Below are positions 4,456-63,571 of a DNA stretch of 64,000 nucleotides, one piece after another. The stretch lies in IMG/VR virus record IMGVR_UViG_3300022744_000022, positions 62,001 through 126,000 of that record. One strand, given 5' to 3'. The translations under genes and the position numbers were made by a program. The number at the start of each line of letters is the position of its first letter. Position 1 is the first letter of the stretch. The notes under the pieces are model-generated. The model searched no databases and was not told the origin of the DNA. It saw only the letters and a list, made by a program, of their open reading frames with translations.

Positions 4456-4461
4456 GGTGTA
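4456..4461 (+). promoter_or_regulatory. GGTGTA motif (putative phage promoter element, leaderless start)
   Basis: 9 nt before ATG 4471, no SD; one of many equally spaced copies. Confidence 0.6.
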
Positions 4462-4470
4462 GACCGCCCC

Positions 4471-6276
4471 ATGGCGGCCCCCAAAGAAGATGTCGTAAGC
4501 AAGCACGAGAAGGCTTACGAGTTCCTAAAGCAGGTCCGGGCGAGCAAGACCGTTACGCTCAAGCCCACCGCTATGTTGCGGTCCGAGATCGTGGGGCTGG
4601 ACGGGACGAGTCGCCCGCTCAAGATCCGGTATTACCAGGTGCAGGCCATCATGCACCTCTTGACCATGAAGCGCATGGTCCTGGGGGACGCGACGGGCAC
4701 GGGTAAAACGCTCGTCCTGATCGCCTCGCTTTGCTACGCCTGGGACAAGGAGCCCACTAACAAGGGCGTGGTGGTGTGCCCCAAATCGGCGCTCCGGCAG
4801 TGGGAAGCTGAAATCCTGAAGTTCGCGGTGGGCATCAAGACCTTTTTGGTAGACGGCACACCGGCGGAACGCAAGGAAGTGTACGAGGCCTTTCAGGCCC
4901 ACCCCACGACCCCAGGGGGCGAGAAAGCGGTGCTCCTGATCGGATACGCCCCGTTGGTCCGGGACTGGAACCAGGGCTCTACTAGGCCCTTGCTGCCCAG
5001 CGGCCAGCCCAACATGAAGGTGCCCCAGACTCCCGGTTTGCTCTCGGGTATCATGGGGTCCATTCCGAACCTGACCGTTACGTTTGACGAGGCCACGGCG
5101 TTCAAGTCCACCAAGACCAAGACGTGGCAAGTCGCGAGCGAGCTGTCTGCGTACGCGAACCGTTGTTACGGCCTGACCGCGACCCTGTTGAAGAACAACC
5201 TGATCGAGGGCTTCGCGATTTTCAAGGTCATCTACCCGCAGGTCTTCACCACCGTCACGGCGTTCCACCGCGACTACTGCGTGACCAAAATGCAACCCGT
5301 GGGTGGGGGTCGGAAGATCCCCATCGTGGTTGGGTACCGGAATCTCGAAGCGTTCCGAGCCCGCATCGACATGTTCTTCTTGGGCCGGGCCAAACACCTG
5401 ATCTCGGACGAGTTGCCCAAGCTCATCACCAAAGAGGTTCAGGTTGACCTGTCCGAGGCCGAAGACGCCAAGTACGTTGAGGCGCTGACCGGGATCCTCC
5501 AGTTGGGGGACGGGCAGATCAAGGACTATGAGGAACACAAGAAGCTTGTGGCCCTCATTTACTGCCAGCAGACCGTCGATTCGCTTTCGTTGCTCAAGTA
5601 CAAGGAAGGCGACGCTCTTGAGCTAGGCCTCTACCACGACGAAATCGTCGAGGTGGCGGGCGTCGGCTCAAAAGAGCAGGCGTTGCTGGATCTTCTGGCC
5701 GAGGAATTCGATGACGAGAAGGTGATCGTGTACACACGCTTTGCCTCGCTTGTCCCGAGGCTCCAGGAGCTGTGCAAGAAGCAGGGGATTGAGTCGGTGG
5801 CGGTGACGGGCCAGGTGGTGGACACGAAGGCCAATCCGGCGCGTCAGAAGGCCCAGCAGGCCTTCCAGGACCTCAACTCGAAGGTCAGGGTCATCTTCAT
5901 CACGGATGCGGGCTCGGAGGCCATCAACCTTCAAGCCGCTTCGGCCATGATTTTCTACAACGCCCCGTGGAGCTGGGGCAACTACGTGCAGCTTTTGGGT
6001 CGCCCGATCAGGATCGGGTCACCTCACCAGCACGTGGTGGCGGTGCATCTTGTGGCCCAGCGCCCCAAAGCCAAGGGCAAAGAGCGGAAAACCATCGACC
6101 ACTACACGTTGGCGATCCTCCAGAAGAAGAAGGACTTGATCGACAAGGTGCTCGGGGAGTCCGCTGTAGGGGCCCTGGACTTCGATTCTGGCGAGAGTTT
6201 CGCCCATTTGCTCATGGACGAGCTACAGAAGTCGGTCAAGGGTCCGCGTGGTGTAGCTAAGCCCCGTGCCACCTGA
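4471..6276 (+). CDS. SNF2-family SF2 helicase
   Basis: LGDATGTGKT, VVCPKS, FDEAT, TATLLKNN, AGSEAINLQ, QLLGRPIRIG. Confidence 0.9.
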   Translation: MAAPKEDVVSKHEKAYEFLKQVRASKTVTLKPTAMLRSEIVGLDGTSRPLKIRYYQVQAIMHLLTMKRMVLGDATGTGKTLVLIASLCYAWDKEPTNKGVVVCPKSALRQWEAEILKFAVGIKTFLVDGTPAERKEVYEAFQAHPTTPGGEKAVLLIGYAPLVRDWNQGSTRPLLPSGQPNMKVPQTPGLLSGIMGSIPNLTVTFDEATAFKSTKTKTWQVASELSAYANRCYGLTATLLKNNLIEGFAIFKVIYPQVFTTVTAFHRDYCVTKMQPVGGGRKIPIVVGYRNLEAFRARIDMFFLGRAKHLISDELPKLITKEVQVDLSEAEDAKYVEALTGILQLGDGQIKDYEEHKKLVALIYCQQTVDSLSLLKYKEGDALELGLYHDEIVEVAGVGSKEQALLDLLAEEFDDEKVIVYTRFASLVPRLQELCKKQGIESVAVTGQVVDTKANPARQKAQQAFQDLNSKVRVIFITDAGSEAINLQAASAMIFYNAPWSWGNYVQLLGRPIRIGSPHQHVVAVHLVAQRPKAKGKERKTIDHYTLAILQKKKDLIDKVLGESAVGALDFDSGESFAHLLMDELQKSVKGPRGVAKPRAT

Positions 6277-7165
6277 GGTCAACAGTTCAAACTGCCCGCT
6301 CTGTAAAGGGGCCCAATGGTTGTACGAGACCAAGGGCGAGGAAGTGATCCCGACCCGGTGTCGGTGCTTGGAGCGGAAGCTTCTGCACGACTTCCTGGGC
6401 CCGGAAATCTATCGCGCTCCCTGGGTCCCGTCGTCCCTGTACAACATCACGACCAACGAGGCCGGGGAGGTCGCGGGGGACCGGACAGAGGAAAACCTGT
6501 TCCTCAAGGGTTCGTGGGCCGTGGTTTGCCAGCACCTTCATTGGGCGCTCTCAGCTAAGCGTCTGTATAGCCCTAGGTTCAACTTCAAGATCGTGGGCAA
6601 CGACAAGCTCATGACAGTGTGGCTGGGTCTGGAGTCCTACACGCAACGGTCAACGGCGACTCGCAACGAGATCGAGACCAACAACAGCCTGGACGATCTT
6701 CTCGGCAACGCCGCTCTCGTGATCATCCGCCTCGATGGCCTTGAGCACCAGAACAAAGCGGCGGCCAACGTTCTGAAAGAGGCGCTCAAGGTCCGGGAAT
6801 TTGGGTACAAACCTACGTGGCTTGCCGAGTGCGGCCGTCGGTTTGGGCCCGGGCACCCGTCCTACAATGAAGCGGTTGGGGACTACATCGAAGAACGCTT
6901 CGACATTGTGGATCTCAGCGACGAAGATCCTAAGACCAGAGCGCAGCAAGCAGCCCTGGATGCAGCGGCCCAAGACATTATGGAGTCCGGTGAGGTCTCG
7001 ATGGGGGCCGATGTGGAAACGCCGCGTCTCGTGGACCCGCCAACTTCCAAGGAGCGCTTTTTTGCAGACCCCGAACCGGACCCTGAACCTGATTCTAGGC
7101 GTTACGTGCCAGGCGGTAAGGGTAAAAAACGCAACAAGGGCAAAGGCCAAGCGGAGCTTGAATAA
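6266..7165 (+). CDS. helicase-loader (DnaC/IstB-like) related protein, degenerate ATPase
   Basis: N-terminal CPLCKG...CRC Zn motif; directly upstream of DnaB; no recognisable Walker A. Confidence 0.45.
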   Translation: MPPEVNSSNCPLCKGAQWLYETKGEEVIPTRCRCLERKLLHDFLGPEIYRAPWVPSSLYNITTNEAGEVAGDRTEENLFLKGSWAVVCQHLHWALSAKRLYSPRFNFKIVGNDKLMTVWLGLESYTQRSTATRNEIETNNSLDDLLGNAALVIIRLDGLEHQNKAAANVLKEALKVREFGYKPTWLAECGRRFGPGHPSYNEAVGDYIEERFDIVDLSDEDPKTRAQQAALDAAAQDIMESGEVSMGADVETPRLVDPPTSKERFFADPEPDPEPDSRRYVPGGKGKKRNKGKGQAELE

Positions 7166-9936
7166 TGCCTAAGCGTCTACTTCGTTCCATCATCGAGTTC
7201 GATTCTGAGATCTCCTCGGAGAACCTCGTCCGTAACTTCCAACGTCTGCGGAAGGCCGTGGACGTTGGGCAGCTCGATTGGGGTCGTCCCGAAGACGAGA
7301 AGCTCTACAAGTACGCTCTCGGCTTCTTCATCCAGCACTTCGAGCTGCCGTCGGCTCAGACCTGCCTCGACTACTTTCAGAGCGTCAACAACGTTGAAGT
7401 CATCGAGCGTCTCAAGGATGTTCAGGTCGAGAAGCCGTACGCCCGCACGAACTTCGTGCATCTCTTGCGGACCCTGCAAGAGGATCAGGCCCGCCTAAAG
7501 GCCGTCGCGTTGCTCAAAGAGACGCACGAGATCCTGGTCAAGGGGATTGAAGACAAGAAGTCTGGGGTGGTTCAGAAGGGCGTTGAAGACGCCATCCTGC
7601 ACTTCACCAAGCGTTCGCAAGAGATCAGGGTCAACGACCACAACGTTCAGATCCACGGTGACATCCGGCAGGACGCTGAGCGGATGAAAGAGGAATACGC
7701 GACCGCTGAGAACGACAAGGGTAAGGTCATTGGCGTCCTGTCGGGCATCAACGAGCTGGATGAGTCTTGCAAGGGTGCCAAAAAGGGCGAGCTGTGGATG
7801 CACGCTGCATTTCCGGGCGAACTCAAGTGCGTTGCCGGGGATGCTACCCTTTTCGATCACGCAACCGGCAGGCTACGGACAGTTCGTGAGCTATTCGAGT
7901 CCGGAGATCTGCCTATTGTGACTGCGCTTGACCGTGAAGGTGAAACCCACAAACTTGTGCAGGCCCAGACTTCGCACCTTGTTGAAAACGGGATCAGGGA
8001 TGTTTACGAGTTATCGTTATCGTCTGGTCGATCTCTTGGGGCGAGCAACAACCACAAAGTCTTCACCCCCAAGGGGTGGCAACAATTGGATGCGTTGAGT
8101 GTCGGTGATTGGGTGGCTGTGCCGTCCATCATGCGAGCCGAACCGCCCAGAGCCTTCACAGATAGTGAGGTCAAAGCTGTTGGTTACTTAATTGGGGATG
8201 GTGCAGTAGACTACTACATCACCCTCACGAACTCTTGCCAGGCTGTGCGAGAGGACTTCAAAGGCTGCCTTCGTGACTTTGGGCTGCAAGAAGGTGCGGC
8301 GGACTACATCACCCCTAACTTCACTGAGAACTTCCCGGAAGACAGGGCACCTTTCATCCGAGTTAGTCACAGCTCGGGGTTGGGGAGTGCCGCAGTCCCA
8401 ACCTCAAGCCTACGCACGCTTCTGGAAGAGCTGGGGGTTTGGGGTTGCACGTCTCGCACAAAGCAAGTCCCTCAAGCGTTCTTAGGGCTTCCGGATGATC
8501 AGGTGGCGCTCTTTCTAGGTGCCCTTTGGGCAACCGACGGATCGTGCCACACAGGGGATCATGAGCGTGAGGACCGGGAATCCTTGTGTTCGCGTAATGA
8601 CATTTCTTACGCCTCGGTTAGCCGGGCCTTGTGTCTTGGGGTTCAATCTCTACTTCTGCGCCTTGGCATCCAGTCTACGGTTACAACGGTACAGACAACC
8701 TATCGAGGGGAACCCTACACGTTTTATTGTGTTCGTGTGGTAACCAACCCCTCGAAGCGGGTATTCGTAGAGCGGATCCAGGTCGCGGGTAAGGAAGATC
8801 GGTTTGCCGAACTTCAGCGTAGATTGCCCTCGACAGACAACCGTCCTTTCCCAACTGACTTCATCCCGGAGGGTATGAAGATCCGCTGGGTTGGGGTGAA
8901 CGGGGAACGGTGGCGTTACGCCACTAACACCAAAAACCGCCCGTCGGCGCAAGCAGACACACTACGTCTTTTTGCCACTGATCCGACTGTAGCGAAAGCC
9001 TTGGACGGGGACTTGGCATGGGAACAGGTGGCGTCTGTGCGGCTCCGTGGGCAGGAGATGACCTACGACCTTTCGGTCCCAGGGCACCACTCGTTTGTGG
9101 TGAACGACATCGTGACCCATAACACGATGCTTGCCTCGAACTGGTGCTACAACGCGGTCACTCGGTTCAAGAAGAATGTCGTGTATGTCTCGTTCGAGAT
9201 GCCTCGCGATCAGATTCGCCGCAACATCTACACGATCCACACTTCCAACGCCCGCTTCCTCAACCAAGGGTACCAAGGACTCGACTACCGTAACATTCGT
9301 GACGGTAACCTGACGAAGGCCGAGAAGGAGTTCTACTTCGACGGGGTGATCCCGGACTTCACCACAAACCCCACGTACGGCACGTTCGAGGTCGTGACCC
9401 CGGACCGTGAGTGGACCATGGAGGATGTGCGGTCTGAGCTTGAGCTTCTCCACAAGGAATTCGAGGTTGGGCTCGTGGTGCTCGACCACGGTCAGTGGAT
9501 TGAGGCTAAGAAGACCAAGAAGAACAAGGACTACACGATTGAGTTGAATTCCGTAATCACGGACGCTAAGCGGTTGGCTCTGAACTTTGATCACAACTCG
9601 GGCGTTCCTGTCTTGATGTTGTTCCAGATCAACCGTACGGGCAAAACGGACGCGGACAAGAACGAGGGCGTCTACAAGATGAACGCCTTGACTTACGCGA
9701 ACAACGCGGAGAAGACCGCTGACGTGATCACCACCACGTACCTCAACACTGAGATGCGTGCCGCTGGGATGACCAAGTTCACGAACCTCAAGAATCGAGA
9801 CAACCCGCTCTTTGACCCGTTTTCAGCCAACGTGAACTTTGGGTGGCGTCGTATCTCTAGCGGCAAGCGCATGGAGCCCCAGGGTTTTTCGGTGGACCAC
9901 CATTCCTCGTATCTGGGCGCTACGGAACAGGTCTAA
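7165..9936 (+). CDS. dnaB: DnaB-like replicative helicase containing an intein
   Basis: SGINELD...GELWMHAAFPGELK|TML (Walker A), YVSFEM, VVLDH, LFQINR, ADV, KNRD. Confidence 0.85.
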   Translation: MPKRLLRSIIEFDSEISSENLVRNFQRLRKAVDVGQLDWGRPEDEKLYKYALGFFIQHFELPSAQTCLDYFQSVNNVEVIERLKDVQVEKPYARTNFVHLLRTLQEDQARLKAVALLKETHEILVKGIEDKKSGVVQKGVEDAILHFTKRSQEIRVNDHNVQIHGDIRQDAERMKEEYATAENDKGKVIGVLSGINELDESCKGAKKGELWMHAAFPGELKCVAGDATLFDHATGRLRTVRELFESGDLPIVTALDREGETHKLVQAQTSHLVENGIRDVYELSLSSGRSLGASNNHKVFTPKGWQQLDALSVGDWVAVPSIMRAEPPRAFTDSEVKAVGYLIGDGAVDYYITLTNSCQAVREDFKGCLRDFGLQEGAADYITPNFTENFPEDRAPFIRVSHSSGLGSAAVPTSSLRTLLEELGVWGCTSRTKQVPQAFLGLPDDQVALFLGALWATDGSCHTGDHEREDRESLCSRNDISYASVSRALCLGVQSLLLRLGIQSTVTTVQTTYRGEPYTFYCVRVVTNPSKRVFVERIQVAGKEDRFAELQRRLPSTDNRPFPTDFIPEGMKIRWVGVNGERWRYATNTKNRPSAQADTLRLFATDPTVAKALDGDLAWEQVASVRLRGQEMTYDLSVPGHHSFVVNDIVTHNTMLASNWCYNAVTRFKKNVVYVSFEMPRDQIRRNIYTIHTSNARFLNQGYQGLDYRNIRDGNLTKAEKEFYFDGVIPDFTTNPTYGTFEVVTPDREWTMEDVRSELELLHKEFEVGLVVLDHGQWIEAKKTKKNKDYTIELNSVITDAKRLALNFDHNSGVPVLMLFQINRTGKTDADKNEGVYKMNALTYANNAEKTADVITTTYLNTEMRAAGMTKFTNLKNRDNPLFDPFSANVNFGWRRISSGKRMEPQGFSVDHHSSYLGATEQV
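7828..9123 (+). mobile_element. intein (432 aa) with LAGLIDADG homing endonuclease
   Basis: Starts CVAGDA, block B SNNHKVF, VGYLIGDG and FLGALWATDGS, ends TYDLSV...DIVTHN, +1 Thr. Confidence 0.93.
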
Positions 9937-14604: not shown

Positions 14605-14632
14605 ACGGTGTAGCTAGAGGCCAGGAGGACAC

Positions 14633-15162: not shown

Positions 15163-15432
15163 GTGACTCGCGACGAGATAGCAGATTTGCTTTCGACTGA
15201 GAACCCATCGGCGCTTTTGGCCGATGGGTTTGAAGACGCCTTTTTAGGTGTGGCACGTCGTTGCGGTCAACCAGCACTTGCCGTGTACGACTACCGTTTG
15301 GGCGTCAAGGTGTTGATGCAACGTGACGCCATGTCCTACGAGGACGCCGTGGAGTGGATGGCGTTCAACGTCTTGGGCGCGTGGGTTGGGGAACACACTC
15401 CAATGTGGCTTGTGACACCTGAGACGGTGTAG
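15163..15432 (+). CDS. conserved phage hypothetical protein
   Basis: DGFEDAFLGV...AVYD...MSYEDAVEW..FNVLGAWVGEHTP. Confidence 0.65.
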   Translation: MTRDEIADLLSTENPSALLADGFEDAFLGVARRCGQPALAVYDYRLGVKVLMQRDAMSYEDAVEWMAFNVLGAWVGEHTPMWLVTPETV

Positions 15433-18615: not shown

Positions 18616-18640
18616 CTCGGAACCTGGTGTATGCCGGGTC

Positions 18641-24232: not shown

Positions 24233-24277
24233 GGCGTTCTGGAAAGTCCCTCTTTGCCGGTGTAGTGTACCCGGGCC

Positions 24278-25552
24278 ATGCCGAGAGAGCCCCAGGTACC
24301 CCGCTGCAACTTCTGTGGTCGTCCCCGCAATGAGGTCAAGCACCTCATTGGAGCGCCGGATGGGGCGAACATCTGCAACGGCTGTATCACCGCGACCTCT
24401 CAGGCTATCGATGAGGCTGAGCGCAAGTCCCCCGGGGCCAAGAAGGCTCAGGGCCCGCTCAAGAAGCCCAAGGAAATCACGGCGTTCGTGGACGAGCACG
24501 TGATCGGCCAGGATGCGGCCAAGCGGGAAATCGCCATCGCGGTCTACGAGCACTACCGCCGCCGGGAAGTAGACAAGAGCAAGAACGGCGTGATCATGCT
24601 CGACGGGGAAGCGGTCGAGATTGAGAAGTCCAACATCTTGCTGCTCGGGCCTTCGGGATCGGGCAAGACGCACATTGCCAGGACGATTGCCCGGTTGCTG
24701 GATGTTCCGTTCTACGTCGGGGATGCCACGAAGCTCACGAGTGCAGGCTACGTCGGGGAGGACGTGGAGTCGTTGCTTCAGGGGCTCTTGGCGGACGCTC
24801 AGAACGACATCGAGAAGGCACAGTGGGGCATCATCTTCCTGGACGAGTTTGACAAGCTGGCCCGCAAGGCTGGCTACGGGGCTTCCGGGATGCGGGATGT
24901 GACCGGCGAGGGTGTCCAGCAGGCCTTGCTCAAGCTTATTGAGGGTGGGCAGGTCGCGGTCCCCCGGGGCATGGGTTCCCGAGCGGTGTCCGGGATGATG
25001 CCTTCTGACGTGGTGGACACCCGGAACATCCTGTTCATCTGTGCCGGGTCCTTCGCAGGGATCGAGCCCGTGATCGAACGCAGGCTCAACAAGTCCACGG
25101 GCCTCGGGTTCGGCAAAGAGCACCGGAAGCAGCACGCCAAGTCCGACCTGTATCGAGAGGTCACGGTCGAGGACATTGAGGAATTCGGGTTGATTCCGGA
25201 GATCGTGGGCCGTCTGCCTGTGATCACCAGCACCTTGGAGTTGACCGAGGACGAGCTGATCCGCATCCTGACCGAGCCCAAGAATGCGATCTGCAAGCAG
25301 TTCCGGGCCTTGTTCTCGTTGGATGGGATTGACCTCCAGTTCGACCCTGAGGCATTGCGGGCGGTGGCTCAAAAGGCTCGGAAGCGGTCCACGGGTGCCC
25401 GAGCATTGCGAGCAATTCTCAAGGAAGTGCTCAAGCCTTACTCCTACGAGGCCCCGGATAACCTGGACATCTCGGCCATCCGCATTACCCCGGAGGCTGT
25501 CGAGACTCCTGGAAAGGCCCTCGTGATGCGAAAAGGCGTTGGGACGGCTTAG
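24278..25552 (+). CDS. clpX: ATP-dependent Clp protease ATP-binding subunit ClpX
   Basis: CNFC...ICNGC Zn domain, GPSGSGKT, GYVGEDVE, LDEFDK, RDVTGEGVQQALLK, LGF loop, TGARAL. Confidence 0.95.
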   Translation: MPREPQVPRCNFCGRPRNEVKHLIGAPDGANICNGCITATSQAIDEAERKSPGAKKAQGPLKKPKEITAFVDEHVIGQDAAKREIAIAVYEHYRRREVDKSKNGVIMLDGEAVEIEKSNILLLGPSGSGKTHIARTIARLLDVPFYVGDATKLTSAGYVGEDVESLLQGLLADAQNDIEKAQWGIIFLDEFDKLARKAGYGASGMRDVTGEGVQQALLKLIEGGQVAVPRGMGSRAVSGMMPSDVVDTRNILFICAGSFAGIEPVIERRLNKSTGLGFGKEHRKQHAKSDLYREVTVEDIEEFGLIPEIVGRLPVITSTLELTEDELIRILTEPKNAICKQFRALFSLDGIDLQFDPEALRAVAQKARKRSTGARALRAILKEVLKPYSYEAPDNLDISAIRITPEAVETPGKALVMRKGVGTA

Positions 25553-25576
25553 AGTTTTTGTGCTTTCTCGTAAGGC

Positions 25577-26257
25577 ATGGATGCTCTTTCGTTGCGTGTC
25601 GCCGCCCGGTTCGGGAGGATCGCTTTTGGCCAAGAAGGTAAGTTCTTGGGTCGAGACTGCCGCCTGACTTGGAGCAGGCACGGCTGGACCCTGGAAGAGC
25701 TGCCGGTCAAGGGCAAGAAAAAGTGCAAGGTGGCGGAGTTGCAGAACCCCGGGACTAGGGGTTGGGCAAACTTTGACGCTTACATCGACGGGAACATCCT
25801 GCGAGATGCGAAGCTGAGCGCTTCGGATTCGTACGAGACTATCAAGCAGAAGATGCTTGACGCTTACGAGTTGGCAGCGGAGCTGACCATCAACAAGATG
25901 ACGCCCGACGAAGCCAAGCATGCCTTGTGGCTCCGTGATCTCAAGTGGTACGAGAACGAGGTCCATTACCTCAAGATCACCCCTGAGAACACGGAACCCT
26001 TCGAGGCTGAGGGCAAGGACTACACGATCAAGGTCACGTGGACCAAGTTCTCAGTCTACTCCCCCGACTCGGACTTTCAGCAAAGTGACCCGTACTACAC
26101 GCAGTACGCGGAGTCCTCGGCCCAAGGGGCACGTAAGCTGTACCAGACTTTGAAAGCGGATCCGAACGCGCTCAAGAGCGTTCCTTGGTCCAAGCTGGGC
26201 GATTGGTTCATCAAGAACAAGATCCCCTACAAGACCAACTTCTCCCAGTGGACCTGA
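25577..26257 (+). CDS. hypothetical protein with N-terminal RVAARF tag
   Basis: MDALSLRVAARFGRIA... Confidence 0.7.
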   Translation: MDALSLRVAARFGRIAFGQEGKFLGRDCRLTWSRHGWTLEELPVKGKKKCKVAELQNPGTRGWANFDAYIDGNILRDAKLSASDSYETIKQKMLDAYELAAELTINKMTPDEAKHALWLRDLKWYENEVHYLKITPENTEPFEAEGKDYTIKVTWTKFSVYSPDSDFQQSDPYYTQYAESSAQGARKLYQTLKADPNALKSVPWSKLGDWFIKNKIPYKTNFSQWT

Positions 26258-29147: not shown

Positions 29148-29204
29148 AGGCAAACTGCGTTTTTTCTAGCCCAAAGTCTTGGCCAAATGGTGTAGTCTGC
29201 GTTC

Positions 29205-32490: not shown

Positions 32491-32544
32491 CTGCTCGGGA
32501 CTGCCGATAAAGACCCTACGAGCCGCCTGGTGTAGAGCCAAGCA

Positions 32545-35486: not shown

Positions 35487-35532
35487 ATCCTACCGTGGTA
35501 CAAATAGTCTCGCCGATGGTGTACTAAGGTAG

Positions 35533-37722: not shown

Positions 37723-37766
37723 GCTTTTCTAGCTACGTAGATCCGGCACCGCAACCAAATAAAGGA

Positions 37767-37802: not shown

Positions 37803-38033
37803 CTGCGCGGCGGATACTTCGCTTATACTGGATCTAGCCTGGAAACTCTTTTAGAACCAAGGACTTAGGCATCACTGGTGGGGCCAGCCGCACGATAAGG
37901 GCACTCGGATGCTCTCCCGGTGCGAAGGGTTGCGCGATAGGGCGCACTTACCTCGACGGTCCACAGGGCTTCACGATGCATCATGAAGTTTCCAATGCCA
38001 TTCGGCGTTCGTTCGCTGGTGTAGGCGTGCAGA

Positions 38034-38222
38034 ATGCCGTCTGACCTTGACTGTCCCCGCTGCCATCACCCGATGACCCAGCACTACGTGGGTGAGGGGT
38101 GAGGTGACAAGTGCTGGGAGCGTGATCACCCGCATGACAGCGGGCGCTGCGGGTGTCGGTACAAGCCCCCTGAAAAACCGAGTCCCGTGAGGGACCTGTG
38201 GGATCACCTGCTCAAAGACTAA
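38034..38222 (+). pseudogene. Cys/His Zn-binding mini-gene with internal in-frame TGA
   Basis: GGTGTA 10 nt upstream; MPSDLDCPRCHHPMTQHYVGEG*GDKCWE...RCGCRY...LWDHLLKD; TGA at 38100-38102. Confidence 0.55.
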
Positions 38223-38250
38223 CTGTTTTGTGCGGCCCGTAAGTAAACCC

Positions 38251-38763: not shown

Positions 38764-38788
38764 CTCCGAGTTGGTGTAGCCGCCTTTC

Positions 38789-39830: not shown

Positions 39831-40796
39831 TTGGACCAAGCCCTGCACTCTGAGCGTGTAGCTCACCGCTTCCTGATCGCCTCGTTCAAGCCGGGCGACT
39901 ACATCTTGTTCGGCAAGTTCCGGAACAAGCGTGGGCGCGTGGTCCGCATCTTCAACGATGAGCGGGACATCCCGTACATCGAGATTCAGCCGGTGCCCAA
40001 GGGCCGCAAGAAGAACAGGATTTTTGGGCTCTACACGATCCGCCAGATGACCCCTGAGGCCATCCAGGAAGCGCAGCAGTTGGAGGCGGCGGAACGGGCT
40101 CTCGTCCACAAGGTGGCGGCCCGTTACCTGGAAGCCACTCAGATGCCGCCTGGGTGGGTTGAGCACAAAGGGTCTGCGGGGCGTTCCTTTTGGATCAGCC
40201 CCGACGGTAAGGCGGAGATCAGCGACACGGGTCGTAAAGGCAGCCCGCAGCGCTTCCAGGTCTTCTTTCTTCAGGACGGGAAACGGCACGAGGACATCGG
40301 CTGGCCGTCCCTCAAGAAGGCGCTCCAGTACCTGAGTGGCGAAGTGGGGTTGAGTGCCCACCCAATGGCCAAGCGGGAGGGCGGCAACCTGGAGAACTTC
40401 CTGGACGGCTTCGCACGACGGCACTCTAGGCTTGGGCGGCTTCTCCCTAAGGTCGTGGAGAAAGCTCAAGGATCCAGCTCGGGGCACGGAGAAGCTCGCC
40501 AACACGGTAACGAGATCTGGCTGTTCCCGAAGTTCTGGGACCTCGATCTCAAGACCCAAGATTTCGTACTGGCTCACGAGATCGGGCACTATGCGTTGAG
40601 TCGGAAACCCGGCACCTGGTTGATGGACCTCGGGAAAGAGCTGGGCGTTGACGTGTGGGACACGGGCAGCCTACCCTTCGGACAGTTCAATCAAGACGAG
40701 GCGTTCGCGGATTCCTTTGCTAGTTACTTCTTAGAGCCGGGTGAACTGCGGAGACGCTACCCTGCTTGGGTTACTTTCGTTGAGGCCGTCCTGTGA
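39831..40796 (+). CDS. multi-module protein: KOW-like, unknown and zincin HExxH modules, two RVAxRF-type tags
   Basis: RVAHRFLIA, FKPGDYILFGKFRNKRGRV, KVAARYLEA, LAHEIGH...EAFADSFA. Confidence 0.7.
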   Translation: MDQALHSERVAHRFLIASFKPGDYILFGKFRNKRGRVVRIFNDERDIPYIEIQPVPKGRKKNRIFGLYTIRQMTPEAIQEAQQLEAAERALVHKVAARYLEATQMPPGWVEHKGSAGRSFWISPDGKAEISDTGRKGSPQRFQVFFLQDGKRHEDIGWPSLKKALQYLSGEVGLSAHPMAKREGGNLENFLDGFARRHSRLGRLLPKVVEKAQGSSSGHGEARQHGNEIWLFPKFWDLDLKTQDFVLAHEIGHYALSRKPGTWLMDLGKELGVDVWDTGSLPFGQFNQDEAFADSFASYFLEPGELRRRYPAWVTFVEAVL

Positions 40797-43700
40797 ACAC
40801 CATGCAAACACGATTGGTCGAACGCTTCACACGGGTAGGGGCCTACTCCGAGGACACCCTAGAGATTGTTGCGGCCGGTCTTGCTCTACTGATCGCGCAG
40901 AACTACATCGTCACCAACCCCTTCTTCGATGAGAAGGAGATCCGAAACTACCTGCTGTTGCGCAAGCAGTTTCACGGGGACTTCGTTCAAGCGTGCCTGG
41001 ACTTGGCAGACGCCTTTGAAGAGGGGCAGTTCGGTCAGGCGGTTCTACCCGCTGTCCCAGCCTTGCGGGCCATCGGGCATCTCGGGGTCAAGCAGGATCA
41101 GCAAGCAATCCGCCAACTCGCAAGAGCGTTCCGAGGGCTCAAGCACCTCAAGTACCGGGATGTCGAAAACCCGAAGCTCATGCGTCTCATCATGATGGCG
41201 CGTAAACTTGATGTCACCACCGGGGCAGATGGTAGGGACATCAAGGACTTCTTGGAGAATCTTGTTAAGATCCAGGCGGTGCCGACAAGACTCCGGACCC
41301 TTCTTCGCAAAGTCATCAAGTTGCCCGTCCCGGGCAGGACGCTCACCGAGAATGCCGATCCAGGCGCTTGGTTCGAGATGCCCGAGGACAAGAAACAAAG
41401 CCTTCGCGAGCTGACCGAGAAGGTTGAGCAAGAGCAGCTTGGGATCTGGGAGAAGTACAAAGACGCCAGTGACGATGAGCGGATGGCGGCTTACCAGAGT
41501 GCTGCCCGTCGCCTACAGAAGATTCAGAGCATCGCAGGCGTGAACCTGGGTGTTATCAAGCGTGACGATGAGGTCCCGCTTGACACGCTTTTGAAGAAGG
41601 AAACGCGACTCGAATCCGACGGACCGACGGAGTACACACGACTCAAAATTGAGGACTACCTCAAAAAGACAGGGGCGTACCGCTTCCAGCGCAAGGAAGG
41701 TGATCCGCTACCTCGTGAGGTCAGCAAGCTGCTCACATTGTTGCGCAAGGCCAAGACCTTCTCGACAATGCAGCGCGTGATCAAGGATGCTGTGGATCGT
41801 CAGGTGTTGGGCAGGGCGTCCACCGAAGATGTCGATCACATCATCACGCAAGCGAACAAGAACCGGGCGTTGAAAGAGGGGAAACCTCTCACGCCTCTAC
41901 AGTTCGAGCCTAAGAGCGTAGAGCAGTTTCAGGTGGACCACGATACGGGCCCCGTGGCGTTCGACCCTGAGTACACGGATGACGAAAAGAAGCAGTTGCT
42001 GGGTCGTGTCTCCCGTGCTTTGAGTGATCTAGAGAGTGTCTACGGAAAAGGCTTCTGTGGTAAGCATGCCAAGAAGCTCGCGTTCCGTTTCAACAAGGGG
42101 TACAGCGGGACCGCTTCCGCTCACTACTTCGTTTGGGATGACCGTCGGACGTGGCAACCCAGGGTAACGTTTGGTCCGGAGTTCGAGGGCCTCTTGGCTC
42201 ACGAACTCTCGCACTACCTGGAAGACTTGCTGGCGTACCAGATTCAGAAGCAGGACGAACCAGAGCGCATCGAGGCCCTCCTGGGTAAAGGGATCGAGGG
42301 AGGACCAGGCGTCCTGTTCTCCAACACGGGGGTGTCCCTGAGGCTCTTCGCTGAGGGTGGTGCCCTGGAGAGTTACCGAGGACACCTAAGTAAGTCGGTC
42401 CCGGAGTTCGTTGAGTTCATCGACGCCGTGCTTGCAACCCCGGACTACAAGCGCTGGGAGGACAAGCTTGGATCAGCGTACGACACCGCACTGCCCATGG
42501 CCATCAAGGCGCTGACAGGGATGAGCTACTACGACTTGCCCAAAGAGCACCCGTACTACGGTTTGATCGACAAGGCGCAATACCGCTCGGACCTGCCCCC
42601 GGAAGTGAACGACGAGACTCAGAAGCAGTTCAAGAACCTGATGGATGGGGATGGGCGCAAGCTCAACTACTACAACAGCTCCACCGAGGTCTGGGCCCGG
42701 ATGTGCGAGCAGTACGTGTACAACCGGCTGATCGATGCGGGGATCTCGAACCCCTGGCTCACACAGATGAACTACGAGGAAGATGTCTTCATGAACGAGA
42801 AGACCTTCGATACGCAGTTACGTCCGATTATGGACAAGATCTTCGCCAAGCTGAAAGGCCGCAAACTCATTGCCAGTGTGCCCATGAGCCCCTTGCGTGA
42901 ACGTCTGGCAGACCGCTTCTTGCTCATCAATCGGGTAGCTGCTCGTTACAAAGAGAAGAAGCAGGTAAAGTCGGAGGACGGCGGCAAGACTACCGTCTAC
43001 GTCTACTCTGAGCGGCAGATCGCCAATCGGAACAAGGCGAAGGCTGAGCGAGTCCAAAAGCTCAGCGGCGCTATCAAGAAGCTGAGGGCCAAGGTCAAGA
43101 AGGACTTGGGGTCCAAGGATCCTGAGACGGCTCGTACAGCACTCGCGGTGGCCCTCATGGATCATACCTATGAGCGAGTTGGCAACGAGAGTTCTGCCAA
43201 GGACGGGCACTTCGGGGTCACGGGGTGGCAGCGTAAGCACGTGAGCTTCGGCAAGGACGGGGCGTTCATCAAGTACGTGGGCAAGTCCGGGGTCAAGCAC
43301 GAGAAGAAGGTCACGGACTCGGCGATCCGTAGTGCGTTGAAGGCTGCTTACGACTCCCTGGAAGGTGATGACACGGGCGTTCTGGAGTGGGACGGGGGCA
43401 AGGTCACGGCCGAGAAGGTGAACCAGTACCTGGAGCCCTTTGACGTTACGGCCAAGGACATCCGTGGCTTCCACGCCAACGACCAGATGCGGGTCAACCT
43501 CAAGAGCGTGCGCTCGAAGGGCGGCTCGCTTCCTGAGGACAAGAAGAAGCGTGAGGACAAGCTCAAGAAGGAGTTCGCGGAAGCTCTTGAAGCGACCGCA
43601 GAGTGCGTGGGGCACGAGGCCGCTACACTCAAGAATCAGTACCTTGTCCCCGGCCTAGAGGACTCGTTTCTCAAGGATGGGACGGTCATCGACAAGCTCG

Positions 43701-43906
43701 GGAGCCAACACGAAGACGAGATCCCCGGCGGCTTGGCGGACAAGAAAAAGCCAAGCGACTTTGACCCCAAGCAACTCGCCAAGGGAATCAAGGTCGAGCT
43801 GGAGCACACCGATGATCGAAATCTCGCGCAAGAGATCTCGATGGATCACTTGACCGAAGATCCGGATTACTACAGCAAGCTTGAGAAGATGGAGTCGGAA
43901 AAATGA
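40793..43906 (+). CDS. large polyvalent protein: HExxH/LPD1-like, type IB DNA topoisomerase and DUF5661-like domains
   Basis: HELSH; STEVWARMCEQYV; RVGNE, YVGKSG, TAKDIR, VGH...NQY; GIKVELEHT...DHLTEDPDYYSKL. Confidence 0.85.
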   Translation: MNTMQTRLVERFTRVGAYSEDTLEIVAAGLALLIAQNYIVTNPFFDEKEIRNYLLLRKQFHGDFVQACLDLADAFEEGQFGQAVLPAVPALRAIGHLGVKQDQQAIRQLARAFRGLKHLKYRDVENPKLMRLIMMARKLDVTTGADGRDIKDFLENLVKIQAVPTRLRTLLRKVIKLPVPGRTLTENADPGAWFEMPEDKKQSLRELTEKVEQEQLGIWEKYKDASDDERMAAYQSAARRLQKIQSIAGVNLGVIKRDDEVPLDTLLKKETRLESDGPTEYTRLKIEDYLKKTGAYRFQRKEGDPLPREVSKLLTLLRKAKTFSTMQRVIKDAVDRQVLGRASTEDVDHIITQANKNRALKEGKPLTPLQFEPKSVEQFQVDHDTGPVAFDPEYTDDEKKQLLGRVSRALSDLESVYGKGFCGKHAKKLAFRFNKGYSGTASAHYFVWDDRRTWQPRVTFGPEFEGLLAHELSHYLEDLLAYQIQKQDEPERIEALLGKGIEGGPGVLFSNTGVSLRLFAEGGALESYRGHLSKSVPEFVEFIDAVLATPDYKRWEDKLGSAYDTALPMAIKALTGMSYYDLPKEHPYYGLIDKAQYRSDLPPEVNDETQKQFKNLMDGDGRKLNYYNSSTEVWARMCEQYVYNRLIDAGISNPWLTQMNYEEDVFMNEKTFDTQLRPIMDKIFAKLKGRKLIASVPMSPLRERLADRFLLINRVAARYKEKKQVKSEDGGKTTVYVYSERQIANRNKAKAERVQKLSGAIKKLRAKVKKDLGSKDPETARTALAVALMDHTYERVGNESSAKDGHFGVTGWQRKHVSFGKDGAFIKYVGKSGVKHEKKVTDSAIRSALKAAYDSLEGDDTGVLEWDGGKVTAEKVNQYLEPFDVTAKDIRGFHANDQMRVNLKSVRSKGGSLPEDKKKREDKLKKEFAEALEATAECVGHEAATLKNQYLVPGLEDSFLKDGTVIDKLGSQHEDEIPGGLADKKKPSDFDPKQLAKGIKVELEHTDDRNLAQEISMDHLTEDPDYYSKLEKMESEK

Positions 43907-46806: not shown

Positions 46807-46832
46807 GTGGGGTGATTACACCACGCGGAGGA

Positions 46833-52848: not shown

Positions 52849-52878
52849 AGGGTTCTTTCTACACTACTACACCGAAAC

Positions 52879-53502: not shown

Positions 53503-53536
53503 GCCGGTACTACAACCAGGGTCCGGGAAACTCTAG
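53503..53536 (-). promoter_or_regulatory. bipartite promoter-like motif CTAGAGTTT-N15-TA
   Basis: CTAGAGTTTCCCGGACCCTGGTTGTAGTACCGGC-ATG; same spacing as copies at 54475, 59203 and 37851. Confidence 0.6.
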
Positions 53537-54441: not shown

Positions 54442-54475
54442 GCCGGTACAACACCTGAGCCCGGAGAAACTCTAG
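54442..54475 (-). promoter_or_regulatory. bipartite promoter-like motif
   Basis: CTAGAGTTTCTCCGGGCTCAGGTGTTGTACCGGC-ATG, near-copy of the 53536 site. Confidence 0.6.
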
Positions 54476-56897: not shown

Positions 56898-56937
56898 AGG
56901 GCTCCAGGTTACACCGAAAGTCAGCGGTCAGCGTCCA

Positions 56938-59170: not shown

Positions 59171-59203
59171 TAACTACTACACCGACGAGAACGAAAACTC
59201 TAG
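59171..59203 (-). promoter_or_regulatory. bipartite promoter-like motif driving the minus-strand array
   Basis: CTAGAGTTTTCGTTCTCGTCGGTGTAGTAGTTA; divergent from GGTGTA at 59288. Confidence 0.6.
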
Positions 59204-59302
59204 ACCTAATTGCAAAAAAGAGCGTCGCGATTACGTGGGCCCAAACCAAACCCGCAGAAACTCAGGCAAATTGCCGGAGAAAAAGTTGGTGTAGGGGGTT
59301 GC

Positions 59303-61268: not shown

Positions 61269-61286
61269 GTGGTGTAGCCGCCAGGT

Positions 61287-62041: not shown

Positions 62042-62060
62042 GCTCAACCGTTGAGACGTT

Positions 62061-62399
62061 TCAATCGTCGCTGGGCTCGTCCTCGTCATCACCGGCGTCA
62101 TCGGAATCGTCGTCCTTCTTGGACTTCTTTTTCCGAGACTTCGGCGCTTCTTTGACGACCGGCGGAGCAACGGCGACCGGGGCAGCCTTCGCTTCGCCCG
62201 AACGCACACGCAGCACCTTGTCCACGAGAGCGATCAGGTGATCCGTCGAGTGCTTGGCAGCACCCTCCGGAATAGCAACGGGGCCTGCTTCTGCTTCCAG
62301 CTCAGCACAATACCCTGCCGCATTGGCGATCTGTCTGCCGTACTGCTTGGCAGTCTGGCATCGGGCCCGGAACTCAGTCAACGCTTGTGGTGTCATCAT
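62061..62399 (-). CDS. hypothetical protein with basic/acidic tail
   Basis: GAGG SD before MMTPQAL; ends KKKSKKDDDSDD. Confidence 0.55.
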   Translation of the reverse strand: MMTPQALTEFRARCQTAKQYGRQIANAAGYCAELEAEAGPVAIPEGAAKHSTDHLIALVDKVLRVRSGEAKAAPVAVAPPVVKEAPKSRKKKSKKDDDSDDAGDDEDEPSDD

Positions 62400-63252
62400 C
62401 CGCCTCTTGCTTCTGTTGGGGGATAAGAGAATTCTCGCCCAAGAGCTGCGGGATCCTGTGACGGCGCTGAGCCCTACCCCCTGCAATTGCAGCAGAGAGC
62501 AACTTGCTCTTGGTGACCTTCGTCTCGTCAATGGGAAGACACGCCCCTGCGTTAGCGAGATCCCGGGGATCCGCCCAGTATGTGTTTCGCATAGGGCCGC
62601 CCACGTTCAGAGGACAGAAGTTACGAGCCTCACCACGCCAGTAATCCATGTCCCCGCCCCACTGGATCGGTTTGCCTGGAAGGGTCTGAGGGACAACACC
62701 ACTAAAGTAGAGTTCGCGAGCTTGACTGCGAAAGGCCGTCCACCCCTTGACCGTGGATGCCCAGTTGCCTGTGCAACCCTCTGGCGTCGGCCTCTTAGTT
62801 GTCGGGTCTTTACCCGTACACTCTACCCAACCCTTCTCAGGCGGCTCTGTGCCTTGCATAGGCAGGTAGCTGACCCAGATTTGGCGGGTGTCCGTGAAGG
62901 GTTCACGTCGCGTAATCTTCGAGGACTGCGCGTACATGGCATTGAGCAGAGACTTGTCGCTCCGCATCTCTCGCATGTTCTCCAACGTCTGGAGCAACTT
63001 CTGGGCTTCTTCAATACTGAATCCGCCCTCGCTCACGCAGATCTTGGTGAACCACTCACTCTCAAGGCGGCTTGTCCGAATAGCCTTCCTAGGTTCGGGA
63101 ACCTTGGGCTGCGCTTCGGCTACCACTACCGTGCTAATGGTCTGAACGACCGCTTGAGGGGCAGCCGTCAAATTAGGTACGCTATCTTGCGCCACCGAAG
63201 TTGAGCAGGCCACCATCGCGAAAGAGATGCTTACGAGCTTCAAACTTTTCAT
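62374..63252 (-). CDS. putative lipoprotein (possible cell-wall hydrolase-like)
   Basis: MKSLKLVSISFAMVA-C lipobox-like; AGGAG SD; KICVSE loosely recalls SleB-type catalytic Glu context. Confidence 0.6.
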   Translation of the reverse strand: MKSLKLVSISFAMVACSTSVAQDSVPNLTAAPQAVVQTISTVVVAEAQPKVPEPRKAIRTSRLESEWFTKICVSEGGFSIEEAQKLLQTLENMREMRSDKSLLNAMYAQSSKITRREPFTDTRQIWVSYLPMQGTEPPEKGWVECTGKDPTTKRPTPEGCTGNWASTVKGWTAFRSQARELYFSGVVPQTLPGKPIQWGGDMDYWRGEARNFCPLNVGGPMRNTYWADPRDLANAGACLPIDETKVTKSKLLSAAIAGGRAQRRHRIPQLLGENSLIPQQKQEADDDTTSVD

Positions 63253-63571
63253 TTCCTGTCTCCTAGTTAGATCGCATCACTCTGAGTGCATGAGCCGTGG
63301 GCATGCCTTTCTTCGGACTCAGATCAGCCACGCTGGTTGGCGTTGTGATTAACGCCTGGACCTGTTGACTACGTTTCTGAGTTCATTGGCTCAAGTTAGA
63401 GATCTTTACACTCATCTGGATGCTGTGAAGTTGACCTTGTAACACTGTGACAAGAGAACTATCGTTTAGGGGTTGAAGTTGGCACAGCATTTGCAAGACA
63501 GCACTTAGAAGTGCGCCCACTCTATTACACCAGCCGCACAGGTTTTTGTTGGGCCCGGTGTATGTACCCCC

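What the first reader, a model, noticed from the sequence alone, without database searches (positions are those of the whole stretch)
4456..63562. GGTGTA about 10 nt upstream of SD-less start codons: candidate phage promoter for leaderless mRNAs
Seen (motif start, spacer to start codon): 4456 (9), 6250 (10), 15426 (11), 18626 (9), 24259 (13), 29189 (10), 32529 (10), 35518 (9), 38018 (10), 38773 (10), 59288 (9), 61271 (10), 63557 (9); minus strand 46822 (10) and 56915 (12). Most have no SD in the spacer. At 14607 the motif is followed about 10 nt later by AGGAGG and a short leader, as expected if it fixes a transcription start. Copies at 4456 and 18626 extend to TCGGAACYTGGTGTA. The TA sits where the TA of a -10 box would if +1 is the A of ATG. 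Inference: a phage-specific sigma/RNAP or activator site giving widespread leaderless translation. It also corrects gene starts (59303) and reveals unannotated ORFs (38034, 63572).
Basis: partly seen in the sequence, partly recalled or inferred. Interest (0 to 1): 0.7.

Follow-up and report, generated by a model that had tools for sequence, protein, structure and literature searches.

The report
Huge-phage promoter making leaderless mRNAs
A seven-base signal (Y-GGTGTA-R) sits 9-10 bases before the start codons of about a quarter of the genes of this huge freshwater phage and its relatives, and most likely is a phage-specific promoter whose transcripts begin at, or within a few bases of, the start codon and so need no ribosome-binding site.

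Summary
All 15 listed sites check out. GGTGTA occurs 34 times in the window (15 expected). In the 208-kb record, ATG or GTG follows at spacer 9-10 in 47 of 117 copies (background 1-2 per spacer).

The window belongs to an incomplete huge phage (CheckV 44%). At least 15 related records of 112-529 kb keep the same arrangement (20-78 hits against 0-8 controls in 14 of them; one has only 2 against 0). Two outgroups lack it.

It behaves as a promoter, not a ribosome-binding site:
- Motif genes lack SD, while other genes carry canonical SD 5-8 nt upstream.
- The base before GGTG is never A.
- Orthologues keep GGTGTA while the flanks diverge. Where it lies 27-50 nt upstream, an SD-like purine run usually appears.
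- Terminator-like hairpins abut it in several relatives.
- A subset has an upstream box (CTAGAGTTy) at fixed spacing.
- It is rare in the structural-gene block.

Read as GGTG plus a TA-led -10 hexamer, the geometry puts +1 on the A or G of the start codon.

Relatives encode a conserved, divergent sigma-like protein. It is not on this fragment.

No transcription start data could be obtained, so the leaderless claim remains inferred.

The parts
4456..4461 (+). GGTGTA, 9 nt before the ATG at 4471 (SNF2-family helicase, 601 aa); no SD
   Evidence: Motif kept in 5 of 5 orthologues whose upstream sequence was available, with unrelated flanks.
6250..6255 (+). GGTGTA, 10 nt before the GTG at 6266 (299 aa); lies inside the end of the upstream gene
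   Evidence: Exact GGTGTA at 9-11 nt is kept in 7 of 14 orthologues (L019, L078, L020, L026, L030, L035, L032); L027, L029 and L031 have other upstream sequence.
14607..14632 (+). GGTGTA-N10-AGGAGG-ACAC before the ATG at 14633 (57 aa): the motif followed by a short leader that carries a canonical SD
   Evidence: L018 keeps GGTGTAGCTAG upstream of the orthologue.
15426..15431 (+). GGTGTA, 11 nt before the ATG at 15443 (AAA ATPase, phrog_8638, 514 aa)
   Evidence: GGTGTA lies upstream of the orthologue in 17 of the 22 relatives with at least 51% identity, at 9-50 nt from the start.
18626..18631 (+). GGTGTA, 9 nt before the ATG at 18641 (126 aa)
24259..24264 (+). GGTGTAGTGTAC, 13 nt (second GTGTA: 8 nt) before the ATG at 24278 (ClpX-like ATPase, 424 aa)
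   Evidence: GGTGTA is kept in 14 of 14 orthologues across GC 42-64%.
29189..29194 (+). GGTGTA, 10 nt before the ATG at 29205 (273 aa); a T-run lies just upstream
32529..32534 (+). GGTGTA, 10 nt before the ATG at 32545 (169 aa)
   Evidence: An identical site is in G001.
35518..35523 (+). GGTGTA, 9 nt before the ATG at 35533 (83 aa)
38018..38023 (+). GGTGTA, 10 nt before the ATG at 38034; the ORF is only 22 aa (has a CxxC)
38773..38778 (+). GGTGTA, 10 nt before the ATG at 38789 (DHH phosphoesterase-like, 327 aa)
46817..46822 (-). GGTGTA, 10 nt before the ATG at 46806 (109 aa)
52868..52873 (-). GGTGTAGTAGTGTAG, 19 nt (second GTGTA: about 11 nt) before the ATG at 52848 (365 aa)
53506..53536 (-). 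Two-box (class I) site: CTAGAGTTT-N12-TTGTAGTAC-N4, then the ATG at 53502 (207 aa)
54445..54475 (-). Two-box site: CTAGAGTTT-N12-GTGTTGTAC-N4, then an ATG at about 54441 (ORF not verified; under 80 aa, absent from the ORF list)
   Evidence: genome 116475, - strand
56910..56915 (-). GGTGTA, 12 nt before the ATG at 56897 (123 aa)
59178..59203 (-). Two-box site CTAGAGTTT-N11-GGTGTAGTAG, followed by a leader of about 40 nt with GGAG before the ATG at 59131 (240 aa)
59288..59293 (+). GGTGTA, 9 nt before the ATG at 59303 (nucleoside 2-deoxyribosyltransferase-like, 388 aa); moves the start down from the TTG at 59210
61271..61276 (+). GGTGTA, 10 nt before the ATG at 61287 (238 aa)
63526..63562 (.). 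Back-to-back pair. The - strand GGTGTA (63531-63526) faces the gene that starts at 63252. The + strand GGTGTA (63557-63562) lies 9 nt before the ATG at 63572 (152 aa, runs past the window's end).

Best explanation
Y-GGTGTA-R is the core of a phage promoter of the sigma-70 family type. GGTG acts as an upstream extension, directly followed by the T(-12) A(-11) of a -10 hexamer whose downstream half is degenerate here: TAGTAC in the strongest copies of this phage, and mostly TA(A/G)TA(T/C) in the sites listed for a lower-GC relative.

RNA polymerase then starts 6-7 nt after the hexamer, which is the A or G of the start codon. The mRNA therefore has no leader, or at most a few bases, and is translated without an SD.

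A subset of sites (class I) adds a -35-like box: CTAGAGTTy, that is TAGAGT 17 bp before TAGTAC.

The signal drives replication, nucleotide-metabolism and small-gene modules, but not the structural block.

Most likely it is read by host core polymerase carrying a phage-encoded, divergent sigma factor that is itself expressed from a host-type TTGACN-N17-TA promoter.

Shown: the motif, its spacing, its conservation across the clade, its mutual exclusion with SD, and its promoter-like contexts. Inferred: the transcription start position, leaderless translation, and which factor reads the motif.
For: (1) Spacing peak: ATG or GTG follows at 9-10 nt in 47 of 117 copies, against 1-2 per other spacer.

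(2) No SD at motif genes: 4 of 47 carry an SD k-mer, against a background of 11%. Other genes show AGGAG 10-fold and GGAGG 8-fold enriched, ending 5-8 nt before the start.

(3) Base -1 is never A (0 of 53 here, 4 of 63 in relatives), although A would extend SD pairing.

(4) Clade-wide: GGTGTAN{9,10}ATG against the reversed-pattern control gives G000 33/2, G001 20/0, G005 72/4, G006 60/0, G009 78/5, G012 65/2, G010 47/3; outgroups G016 8/6 and G017 2/6.

(5) Orthologous sites keep GGTGTA while flanks and GC content (42-64%) change: ClpX 14 of 14, SNF2 5 of 5, AAA 17 of 22. DnaB orthologues (17) never have the motif and mostly carry G-rich, SD-like runs.

(6) Where the motif lies 27-50 nt from the start, an SD-like run usually appears (L027 GAGGAG, L030 GGAG, L024 GAGGA; ClpX of L021 AAGGA; L020 shows none). 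The same holds in this window at 14607 and 59178.

(7) Terminator-like hairpin plus T-run sits directly upstream of the motif in L025, L034, L031 and L020, leaving no room for another promoter.

(8) Class I sites have a second box at a fixed span, AGAGTT-N14-TGTA: 9 in G000, 18 in G010, 2 in G001.

(9) Context: 35% of genes after a strand switch and 42% with a 15-60 nt gap carry the motif, but only 6% of genes abutting their upstream neighbour. Back-to-back pairs have 36-56 bp between their start codons.

(10) Module bias: 4 of 34 crude gene calls in the first 60 kb (tail and baseplate genes) carry the motif, against 43 of 179 in the rest.

(11) No sigma-70 consensus promoters in the record (4 against 9 control; 3 against 4.4 expected in window 20-40 kb).

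(12) No Pfam RNA polymerase beta or beta' in four complete and one 87%-complete relative, and no T7-type polymerase in the four complete ones.

(13) A conserved family of about 320 aa occurs in 10 clade members, including all 4 that are at least 90% complete, and is absent from both outgroups. It has weak Sigma70_r2 hits in 3 members. JGI names two members sigma-24 family, one with a precomputed PF04542 hit. In the structure search, about 20 of the top 50 matches are sigma domain 2, with Z 5.2-6.9 (SigB, pro-sigK, SigI, ECF sigmas, T4 gp55, sigma-28, sigma-70).

(14) Upstream of that gene, 6 of 6 close members have TTGACN followed after about 17 nt by a TA-led hexamer (TAGTCC, TACGAA, TACGTA; GTACTC in L087).
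Against: No transcription start data: the only RNA run found holds unrelated ClpX fragments.

The sigma-like gene is not on this 44%-complete record. Its fold matches are below the level the tool calls safe for helical proteins (Z under 8), and Foldseek gave no significant hit.

GGTG abuts TA without the spacer base of the classical TGn extended -10.

Class I sites leave only 4-5 nt between the hexamer and the ATG, which is short for +1 on the A.

In some high-GC relatives the 9-11 nt spacer is purine-rich (for example AGAGGGGATT). That could be an SD in a very short leader if transcription began right after GGTGTA.

The host is unknown, so its 16S tail and its capacity for leaderless translation are inferred only from the SDs in the phage.
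Confidence: 0.72

Rival explanations
1. An atypical ribosome-binding or translation-enhancer signal in the RNA. GGUGUA, transcribed as part of a leader of 16 nt or more, recruits the ribosome by pairing with rRNA or through a phage-encoded protein, in place of an SD.
For: The distance to the start codon is fixed and the motif excludes SD. GGUG can pair with CACC of the 16S tail. Huge phages are known to encode translation-initiation proteins, and some lack identifiable SDs (PMC7162821).
Against: Only 4 nt are complementary, and the base that would extend the pairing (A at -1) is avoided: 0 of 53. GGTG ends 11-12 nt before the start, whereas true SDs in the same genome end 5-8 nt before it and include AGGTG and GAGGT at normal spacing. 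Orthologues place the motif 27-50 nt from the start, usually with an SD-like run in between. Terminator-like hairpins directly upstream, and back-to-back pairs 36-56 bp apart, leave no room for a separate promoter. The second box at a fixed 14-nt span is a DNA-type architecture. The motif is rare where genes abut (4 of 67).
Confidence: 0.1
2. The same promoter element, but read by the host's own sigma factor (housekeeping or alternative, for example a group-3 sigma of the sigma-28 or sigB type) rather than by a phage-encoded factor.
For: The -10-like geometry fits the sigma-70 family. The class I layout TAGAGTTT-N11-GGTGTAGT resembles the sigma-28 consensus TAAAGTTT-N11-GCCGATAA (recalled from memory, not tested). 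The sigma-like gene is not on this record.
Against: The hexamer is invariant across phages of GC 42-64% from different habitats, which suggests a factor that travels with the phage. A conserved sigma-like gene tracks the motif across the clade and is absent from both outgroups. That gene itself has a different, host-type TTGACN-N17 promoter.
Confidence: 0.13
3. Transcription starts immediately after GGTGTA (as with short promoters of non-canonical phage polymerases such as phiKZ TATG or AR9 AACA-N6-TA/G), giving 9-10 nt leaders. Alternatively, the site directs RNA cleavage that creates short or leaderless 5' ends.
For: The conserved block is very short, as in AR9 and phiKZ late promoters (PMC5312081). 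Spacers are purine-rich in some relatives.
Against: No recognisable phage RNA polymerase in four complete and one 87%-complete relative. Spacers in this phage hold no SD (4 of 47), so a 9-10 nt leader would have no known way to recruit ribosomes. The class I -35-like box at 17 bp fits a sigma-type polymerase.
Confidence: 0.05

Closest known systems
Extended -10 promoters of Thermus phage P23-45 middle and late genes
   Same: Phage promoters that do without a -35 box and rely on an upstream extension of the -10 hexamer, used for a temporal class of genes (PMC7403470, citing Berdygulova 2011). My recollection that many of those transcripts are leaderless is from memory; the paper could not be read.
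   Different: Those promoters are read by host sigma-A, with phage gp39 and gp76 modifying the polymerase. Here GGTG abuts TA with no spacer base, the downstream half of the hexamer is degenerate, and a phage sigma-like protein is the likelier reader.
Leaderless genes of Actinobacteria and Deinococcus (TANNNT about 7 nt before the start codon)
   Same: A -10 element at a fixed short distance from ATG or GTG, no SD, and both ATG and GTG used (from established knowledge; the Cortes 2013 reference appears).
   Different: Here no T is enriched at the last hexamer position; specificity lies in GGTG upstream of TA. The scale is a phage regulon of roughly 45-80 exact GGTGTA-N9/10-ATG sites per complete genome, and other genes in the same phage use strong SDs.
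T4 late promoters (TATAAATA, gp55) and other phage-sigma promoters
   Same: A short -10-only element read by a small, divergent phage sigma. T4 gp55 is among the fold matches of the candidate sigma (7d7d_F, Z 6.1).
   Different: T4 late mRNAs have leaders with SDs. The sequence is different, and the candidate here carries an insertion of roughly 100 aa in domain 2 and a C-terminal helical domain.
AR9 and phiKZ late promoters (AACA-N6-TA/G; TATG)
   Same: Very short conserved promoter words in giant phages (PMC5312081).
   Different: Those are read by phage multisubunit polymerases, and AR9 leaders are 26-491 nt long. No such polymerase was found in this clade.

Membership tests
Sigma-70-family promoter (-10 element, with or without -35) | T(-12) A(-11) of a hexamer 6-7 nt upstream of a purine start site | tested here: inconclusive
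   The geometry fits if +1 is the A or G of the start codon: spacer 9-10 equals 4 nt of hexamer plus 5-6 nt. In the sites listed for the lower-GC relative G010 the hexamer mostly reads TA(A/G)TA(T/C). No start site was mapped.
Sigma-70-family promoter (-10 element, with or without -35) | A -35 element 17 +/- 1 bp upstream | tested here: inconclusive
   Present only in the class I subset: TAGAGT-N17-TAGTAC, with a fixed span in 9 sites here and 18 in G010. Absent from the bulk of sites.
Sigma-70-family promoter (-10 element, with or without -35) | Recognition by a sigma factor bound to core polymerase | not testable with these tools
   There is only a candidate: a sigma-like family in relatives.
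Classical extended -10 (TGnTATAAT) | TG at -15/-14, separated from the hexamer by one base | tested here: not met
   TG sits at -14/-13, directly abutting TA; the GG before it is invariant.
Leaderless mRNA | No SD upstream of the start codon | tested here: met
   4 of 47 motif genes have an SD k-mer, against a background of 11% and strong SD use elsewhere in the genome.
Leaderless mRNA | The start codon at the 5' end is AUG or GUG | tested here: met
   At spacer 9-10 there is an excess of about 31 ATG and 10 GTG, with no clear excess of TTG (5 against about 3) or CTG. TTG is 13 of 86 in SD-led gene calls.
Leaderless mRNA | The primary 5' end lies at, or within a few nt of, the start codon | not testable with these tools
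   No RNA run holds this phage.
Shine-Dalgarno or shifted SD | Complementarity to the 16S 3' tail, at 5-9 nt from the start | tested here: not met
   Only GGUG:CACC can pair. A at -1 is avoided. GGTG ends 11-12 nt from the start, against 5-8 nt for real SDs in this genome. The host 16S itself is unknown.
Promoter of a phage-encoded RNA polymerase (T7-like, or phiKZ/AR9-like) | A phage RNA polymerase gene in the genome | tested here: not met
   PF00562 and PF00623 gave no hit in four complete and one 87%-complete relative; PF00940 gave none in the four complete relatives and G000. The PF00940 control rang nowhere, and very divergent polymerases could escape Pfam.
Sigma-70 family protein (for the ~320-aa candidate in relatives) | Domain 2 (regions 2.1-2.4) and domain 4 folds | tested here: inconclusive
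   Pfam Sigma70_r2 E = 7e-4 to 0.015, below the cut-off. One family member has a precomputed PF04542 hit, and JGI names two members sigma-24 family. The AF2 model (pLDDT 74) aligns to sigma domain 2 of many sigmas at Z 5.2-6.9 and rmsd 2.4-3.6. Foldseek E is 0.7 or worse. The profile found nothing in the sequences of solved structures.

The most novel reading that the evidence does not exclude
A whole clade of 250-530 kb phages carries its own divergent sigma factor, with domain 2 split by a large insertion. It redirects host core polymerase to a GGTG-TA promoter word placed so that dozens of early and middle transcripts per genome (45-80 exact sites in complete relatives) are born leaderless. 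This couples phage-specific transcription to SD-independent translation, and could let phage genes be expressed while SD-dependent host translation is shut down.
Probability: 0.4. Interest if true: 0.75.

Novelty: new variant of a known kind. Interest (0 to 1): 0.6.

Why it matters
If confirmed, this gives a simple sequence rule that does three things.

First, it fixes gene starts in a large group of uncultured huge phages, where standard gene callers that rely on SD will misplace them or miss small genes.

Second, it defines a temporal regulon without any culture work.

Third, it points to a testable pair: a divergent sigma-like protein and a 7-bp promoter word.

Leaderless expression on this scale in a phage whose other genes use strong SDs would also make it possible to test whether huge phages separate their own translation from that of the host.

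Tried and rejected
RNA evidence: two searches for sequencing runs found only the source DNA run, plus one wastewater RNA-labelled run. When laid on the window, that run held only short pieces of other organisms' ClpX at under 90% likeness. No start sites could be read.

Host: a scan of species genomes with the AAA-ATPase alignment found no relative. The only tRNA on the record is an amber-suppressor type, which gives no host clue.

Phage database: blastn of 7.6 kb found only a 167-bp weak match.

Terminators: my own hairpin plus T-run screen was too noisy at 58% GC to test for association. The tool's scan found no excess either: 19 against 19.8.

Sigma-70 consensus promoters: none in excess.

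Foldseek against PDB for the sigma candidate: no significant hit, although sigma chains crowd the top of the list. A profile search of solved-structure sequences gave nothing relevant.

A second recurring word, TCGTA(A/G)G, seen before a few start codons, turned out to be common inside genes (89 copies against 46 expected) and was dropped.

A suspected GATCT(A/G)A junction signal in the structural operons showed no positional peak.

The TCGGAACY extension is not conserved in relatives.

Full report
**What the window is.** The window is bases 62001-126000 of a 208,486-bp IMG/VR virus record that CheckV rates 44% complete. It comes from a freshwater metagenome and has 56-61% GC. It carries a replication and nucleotide-metabolism module:
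- SNF2 helicase
- DnaB with an intein
- family A DNA polymerase
- two AAA ATPases, one of them ClpX-like
- a protein with a topoisomerase IB-like domain
- a DHH phosphoesterase
- a deoxyribosyltransferase-like protein

The first 60 kb of the record holds large tail and baseplate genes.

**The observation.** The 14607 site is followed by AGGAGG and an ATG, as described.

GGTGTA occurs 34 times in the window against 15.3 +/- 3.4 expected. In the whole record there are 117 copies. Forty-seven of them are followed by ATG (33) or GTG (14) at spacer 9 or 10, against one or two at any other spacer. A dozen control hexamers show no such peak.

Fifty-three sites open ORFs of at least 40 aa. Aligned on the motif they give Y-GGTGTA-R-t. 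The base before GGTG is never A, and nothing is conserved further upstream in the bulk of sites.

**A second layer.** About a dozen sites add an upstream box at fixed spacing: CTAGAGTTy-N11-GGTGTAGTAC-N4/5-ATG. Read in sigma-70 terms this is TAGAGT, 17 bp, TAGTAC. Two of these sites are followed by real leaders that carry an SD (genome 168410; window 59178-59203). The fixed span AGAGTT-N14-TGTA recurs 9 times here, 18 times in relative G010 and twice in G001.

**The family.** Using the AAA ATPase as a marker, I found 22 IMG/VR loci with at least 51% identity (21 distinct contigs). They include records with terminal repeats of 398, 412 and 435 kb, and one record of 529 kb. Seventeen of the records were searched whole.

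The arrangement GGTGTA-N9/10-ATG is strongly over-represented in 14 of the 15 clade records searched, compared with the same pattern read backwards. Examples are 72/4, 60/0, 78/5, 65/2, 55/3, 47/3 and 20/0. The fifteenth, G003 (23% complete), has 2/0. It is not over-represented in two distant outgroups, at 8/6 and 2/6.

At orthologous genes the hexamer is kept while everything around it changes and GC content runs from 42 to 64%:
- ClpX: 14 of 14 orthologues keep it.
- SNF2: 5 of 5 keep it.
- AAA ATPase: 17 of 22 keep it.
- DnaB: none of 17 orthologues has it; most carry G-rich SD-like runs instead.

**Promoter or ribosome-binding site?** Several independent observations favour a DNA-level promoter.

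(a) Motif genes lack SD: 4 of 47, against a background of 11%. The other genes show AGGAG and GGAGG enriched 8-10-fold, ending 5-8 nt before the start. AGGTG and GAGGT are also enriched, so the host anti-SD is the usual CACCUCC. My start-picking rule favours SD words, so the share of SD-led genes is biased. The spacing peak is not.

(b) As a shifted SD the motif fails. Only GGUG could pair. The A that would extend the pairing is avoided. GGTG ends 11-12 nt from the start codon.

(c) In relatives the motif upstream of the same gene can lie 27-50 nt from the start. An SD-like run then usually appears next to the ATG: L027 GAGGAG, L030 GGAG, L024 GAGGA, and ClpX of L021 AAGGA. L020, at 27 nt, shows none. 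The window's 14607 and 59178 sites behave the same way.

(d) In L025, L034, L031 and L020 a terminator-like hairpin with a T-run ends a few bases before the motif. The gene's promoter must therefore lie in the roughly 30 nt that contain it.

(e) Back-to-back motif pairs sit between divergent start codons only 36-56 bp apart.

(f) The motif marks 35% of genes after a strand switch and 42% of genes with a 15-60 nt gap, but only 6% of genes that abut their upstream neighbour.

(g) It is rare in the structural block. Four of 34 crude gene calls in the first 60 kb carry it, against 43 of 179 in the rest. G010 likewise has a gap of about 75 kb without it. This fits a promoter class for a temporal group of genes, not a general translation signal.

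**Geometry.** In the sites listed for the lower-GC relative G010 the motif mostly continues as GGTGTA(A/G)TA(T/C). The natural reading is GGTG plus a -10 hexamer TA(A/G)TA(T/C). With spacers of 9-10 nt, the start codon's A or G is then the 6th or 7th base after the hexamer. That is the usual start position for sigma-70-family holoenzymes, and a purine (established knowledge).

It is not the classical TGn extension, because TG abuts TA. Class I sites leave only 4-5 nt after the hexamer. Some orthologous sites have spacers of 11-14 nt, so leaders of zero to a few bases are the realistic claim.

**Who reads it?**
- Sigma-70 consensus promoters are not enriched in this record.
- No Pfam RNA polymerase beta or beta' domain was found in four complete and one 87%-complete relative, and no T7-type polymerase in the four complete ones.
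- A weak Sigma70_r2 hit in three relatives led to a conserved protein family of about 320 aa. It is present in 10 clade members, including all four that are at least 90% complete. It is absent from both outgroups and from the fragmentary records, this one included.
- JGI annotates two members as sigma-24 family, and one member has a precomputed PF04542 hit.
- An AlphaFold model (pLDDT 74) aligns through residues 9-210, skipping an insertion of roughly 100 residues, to domain 2 of SigB, pro-sigK, SigI, several ECF sigmas, T4 gp55, sigma-28 and sigma-70. Z is 5.2-6.9. These scores are below the tool's safe level for helical proteins, and Foldseek gave no significant hit. I therefore call it a candidate.
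- Upstream of this gene, six of six close members have TTGACN followed after about 17 nt by a TA-led hexamer (GTACTC in L087), and then a leader with GGGGA. This fits a cascade: host sigma first, then the phage sigma, then GGTGTA promoters.
- Complete relatives also encode a protein of about 210 aa with two sigma region 4-like domains. It could read the CTAGAGTTy box. This was not tested.

**What remains open.** There are no transcription start data. The purine-rich spacers in some high-GC relatives could be G-rich discriminators, or SDs in very short leaders. The host is unknown.

**Literature.** I found no description of this motif. The huge-phage survey reports only Prodigal RBS predictions and sigma genes in general (PMC7162821). 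One family member lies on an NCBI record, GCA_902725915.1. I think it belongs to that survey's deposit, but I did not verify this.

The closest known cases are these:
- Extended -10 middle and late promoters of Thermus phage P23-45 (PMC7403470).
- Leaderless genes of Actinobacteria.
- -10-only promoters read by phage sigmas, such as T4 gp55.
- The short promoter words of AR9 and phiKZ, which however give long leaders and need phage polymerases (PMC5312081).

**Verdict.** The promoter-for-leaderless-mRNA reading is the best-supported explanation (about 0.7). The phage-sigma part is plausible (about 0.4-0.5) but rests on relatives. I rate it a new variant of a known kind.

Noticed in passing
L013:8711-8783 (genome 134711-134783, outside the window): The only tRNA on the record has anticodon CTA, so it is an amber-suppressor type. 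TAG nevertheless ends 48 of 213 crude ORFs, and long ORFs stay open under code 11, so there is no sign of general recoding.
   Followed up: partly
window 7165-9936 (+): The DnaB-like helicase is interrupted by an intein with a LAGLIDADG homing endonuclease domain.
   Followed up: no
window 40793-43906 (+): A 1037-aa protein combines a eukaryotic-type topoisomerase IB catalytic core, an LPD1 domain and DUF5661. It had no PHROG match.
   Followed up: no
window 38018-38260 (+): The motif at 38018 opens only a 22-aa ORF (MPSDLDCPRCHH...). Cys- and His-rich coding-looking sequence continues in another frame, so this may be a small zinc-ribbon gene with a frameshift or an assembly error.
   Followed up: partly
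window 37686-37733 (+): The strongest terminator-like hairpin of the record: a 16-bp stem (about -33 kcal/mol) followed by CTTTTCT, at the end of a convergent gene pair.
   Followed up: no
whole record (G000): The palindrome GCTAGC is under-represented: 44 copies against about 130 in mononucleotide shuffles. This may be restriction-site avoidance.
   Followed up: no
L100:1177-1818 (-), L101:1177-1800 (-), L099, L098 (relatives G010, G008, G006, G005): A conserved protein of about 210 aa has two tandem Sigma70 region 4-like helix-turn-helix domains and no region 2. It is not on the G000 fragment.
   Followed up: partly
genome 153026-153406 (+), outside the window: A small Cys-rich protein (127 aa) has a C-terminal region 4-like helix-turn-helix (Pfam PF04545, E = 5e-5, below the cut-off). 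It lies in a 977-bp gap between two divergent motif genes.
   Followed up: no
window 25545-25579 (+): TTAGAGTTT-N10-TCGTAAGGC directly before the ATG at 25577 is kept in L018, and in L021 as TTAGAGTTT-N10-GTGTAGAGC-ATG. This is a class I-like site in which the -10 part has drifted and the box-to-ATG distance is 6 nt shorter. The true start codon may lie further downstream.
   Followed up: partly
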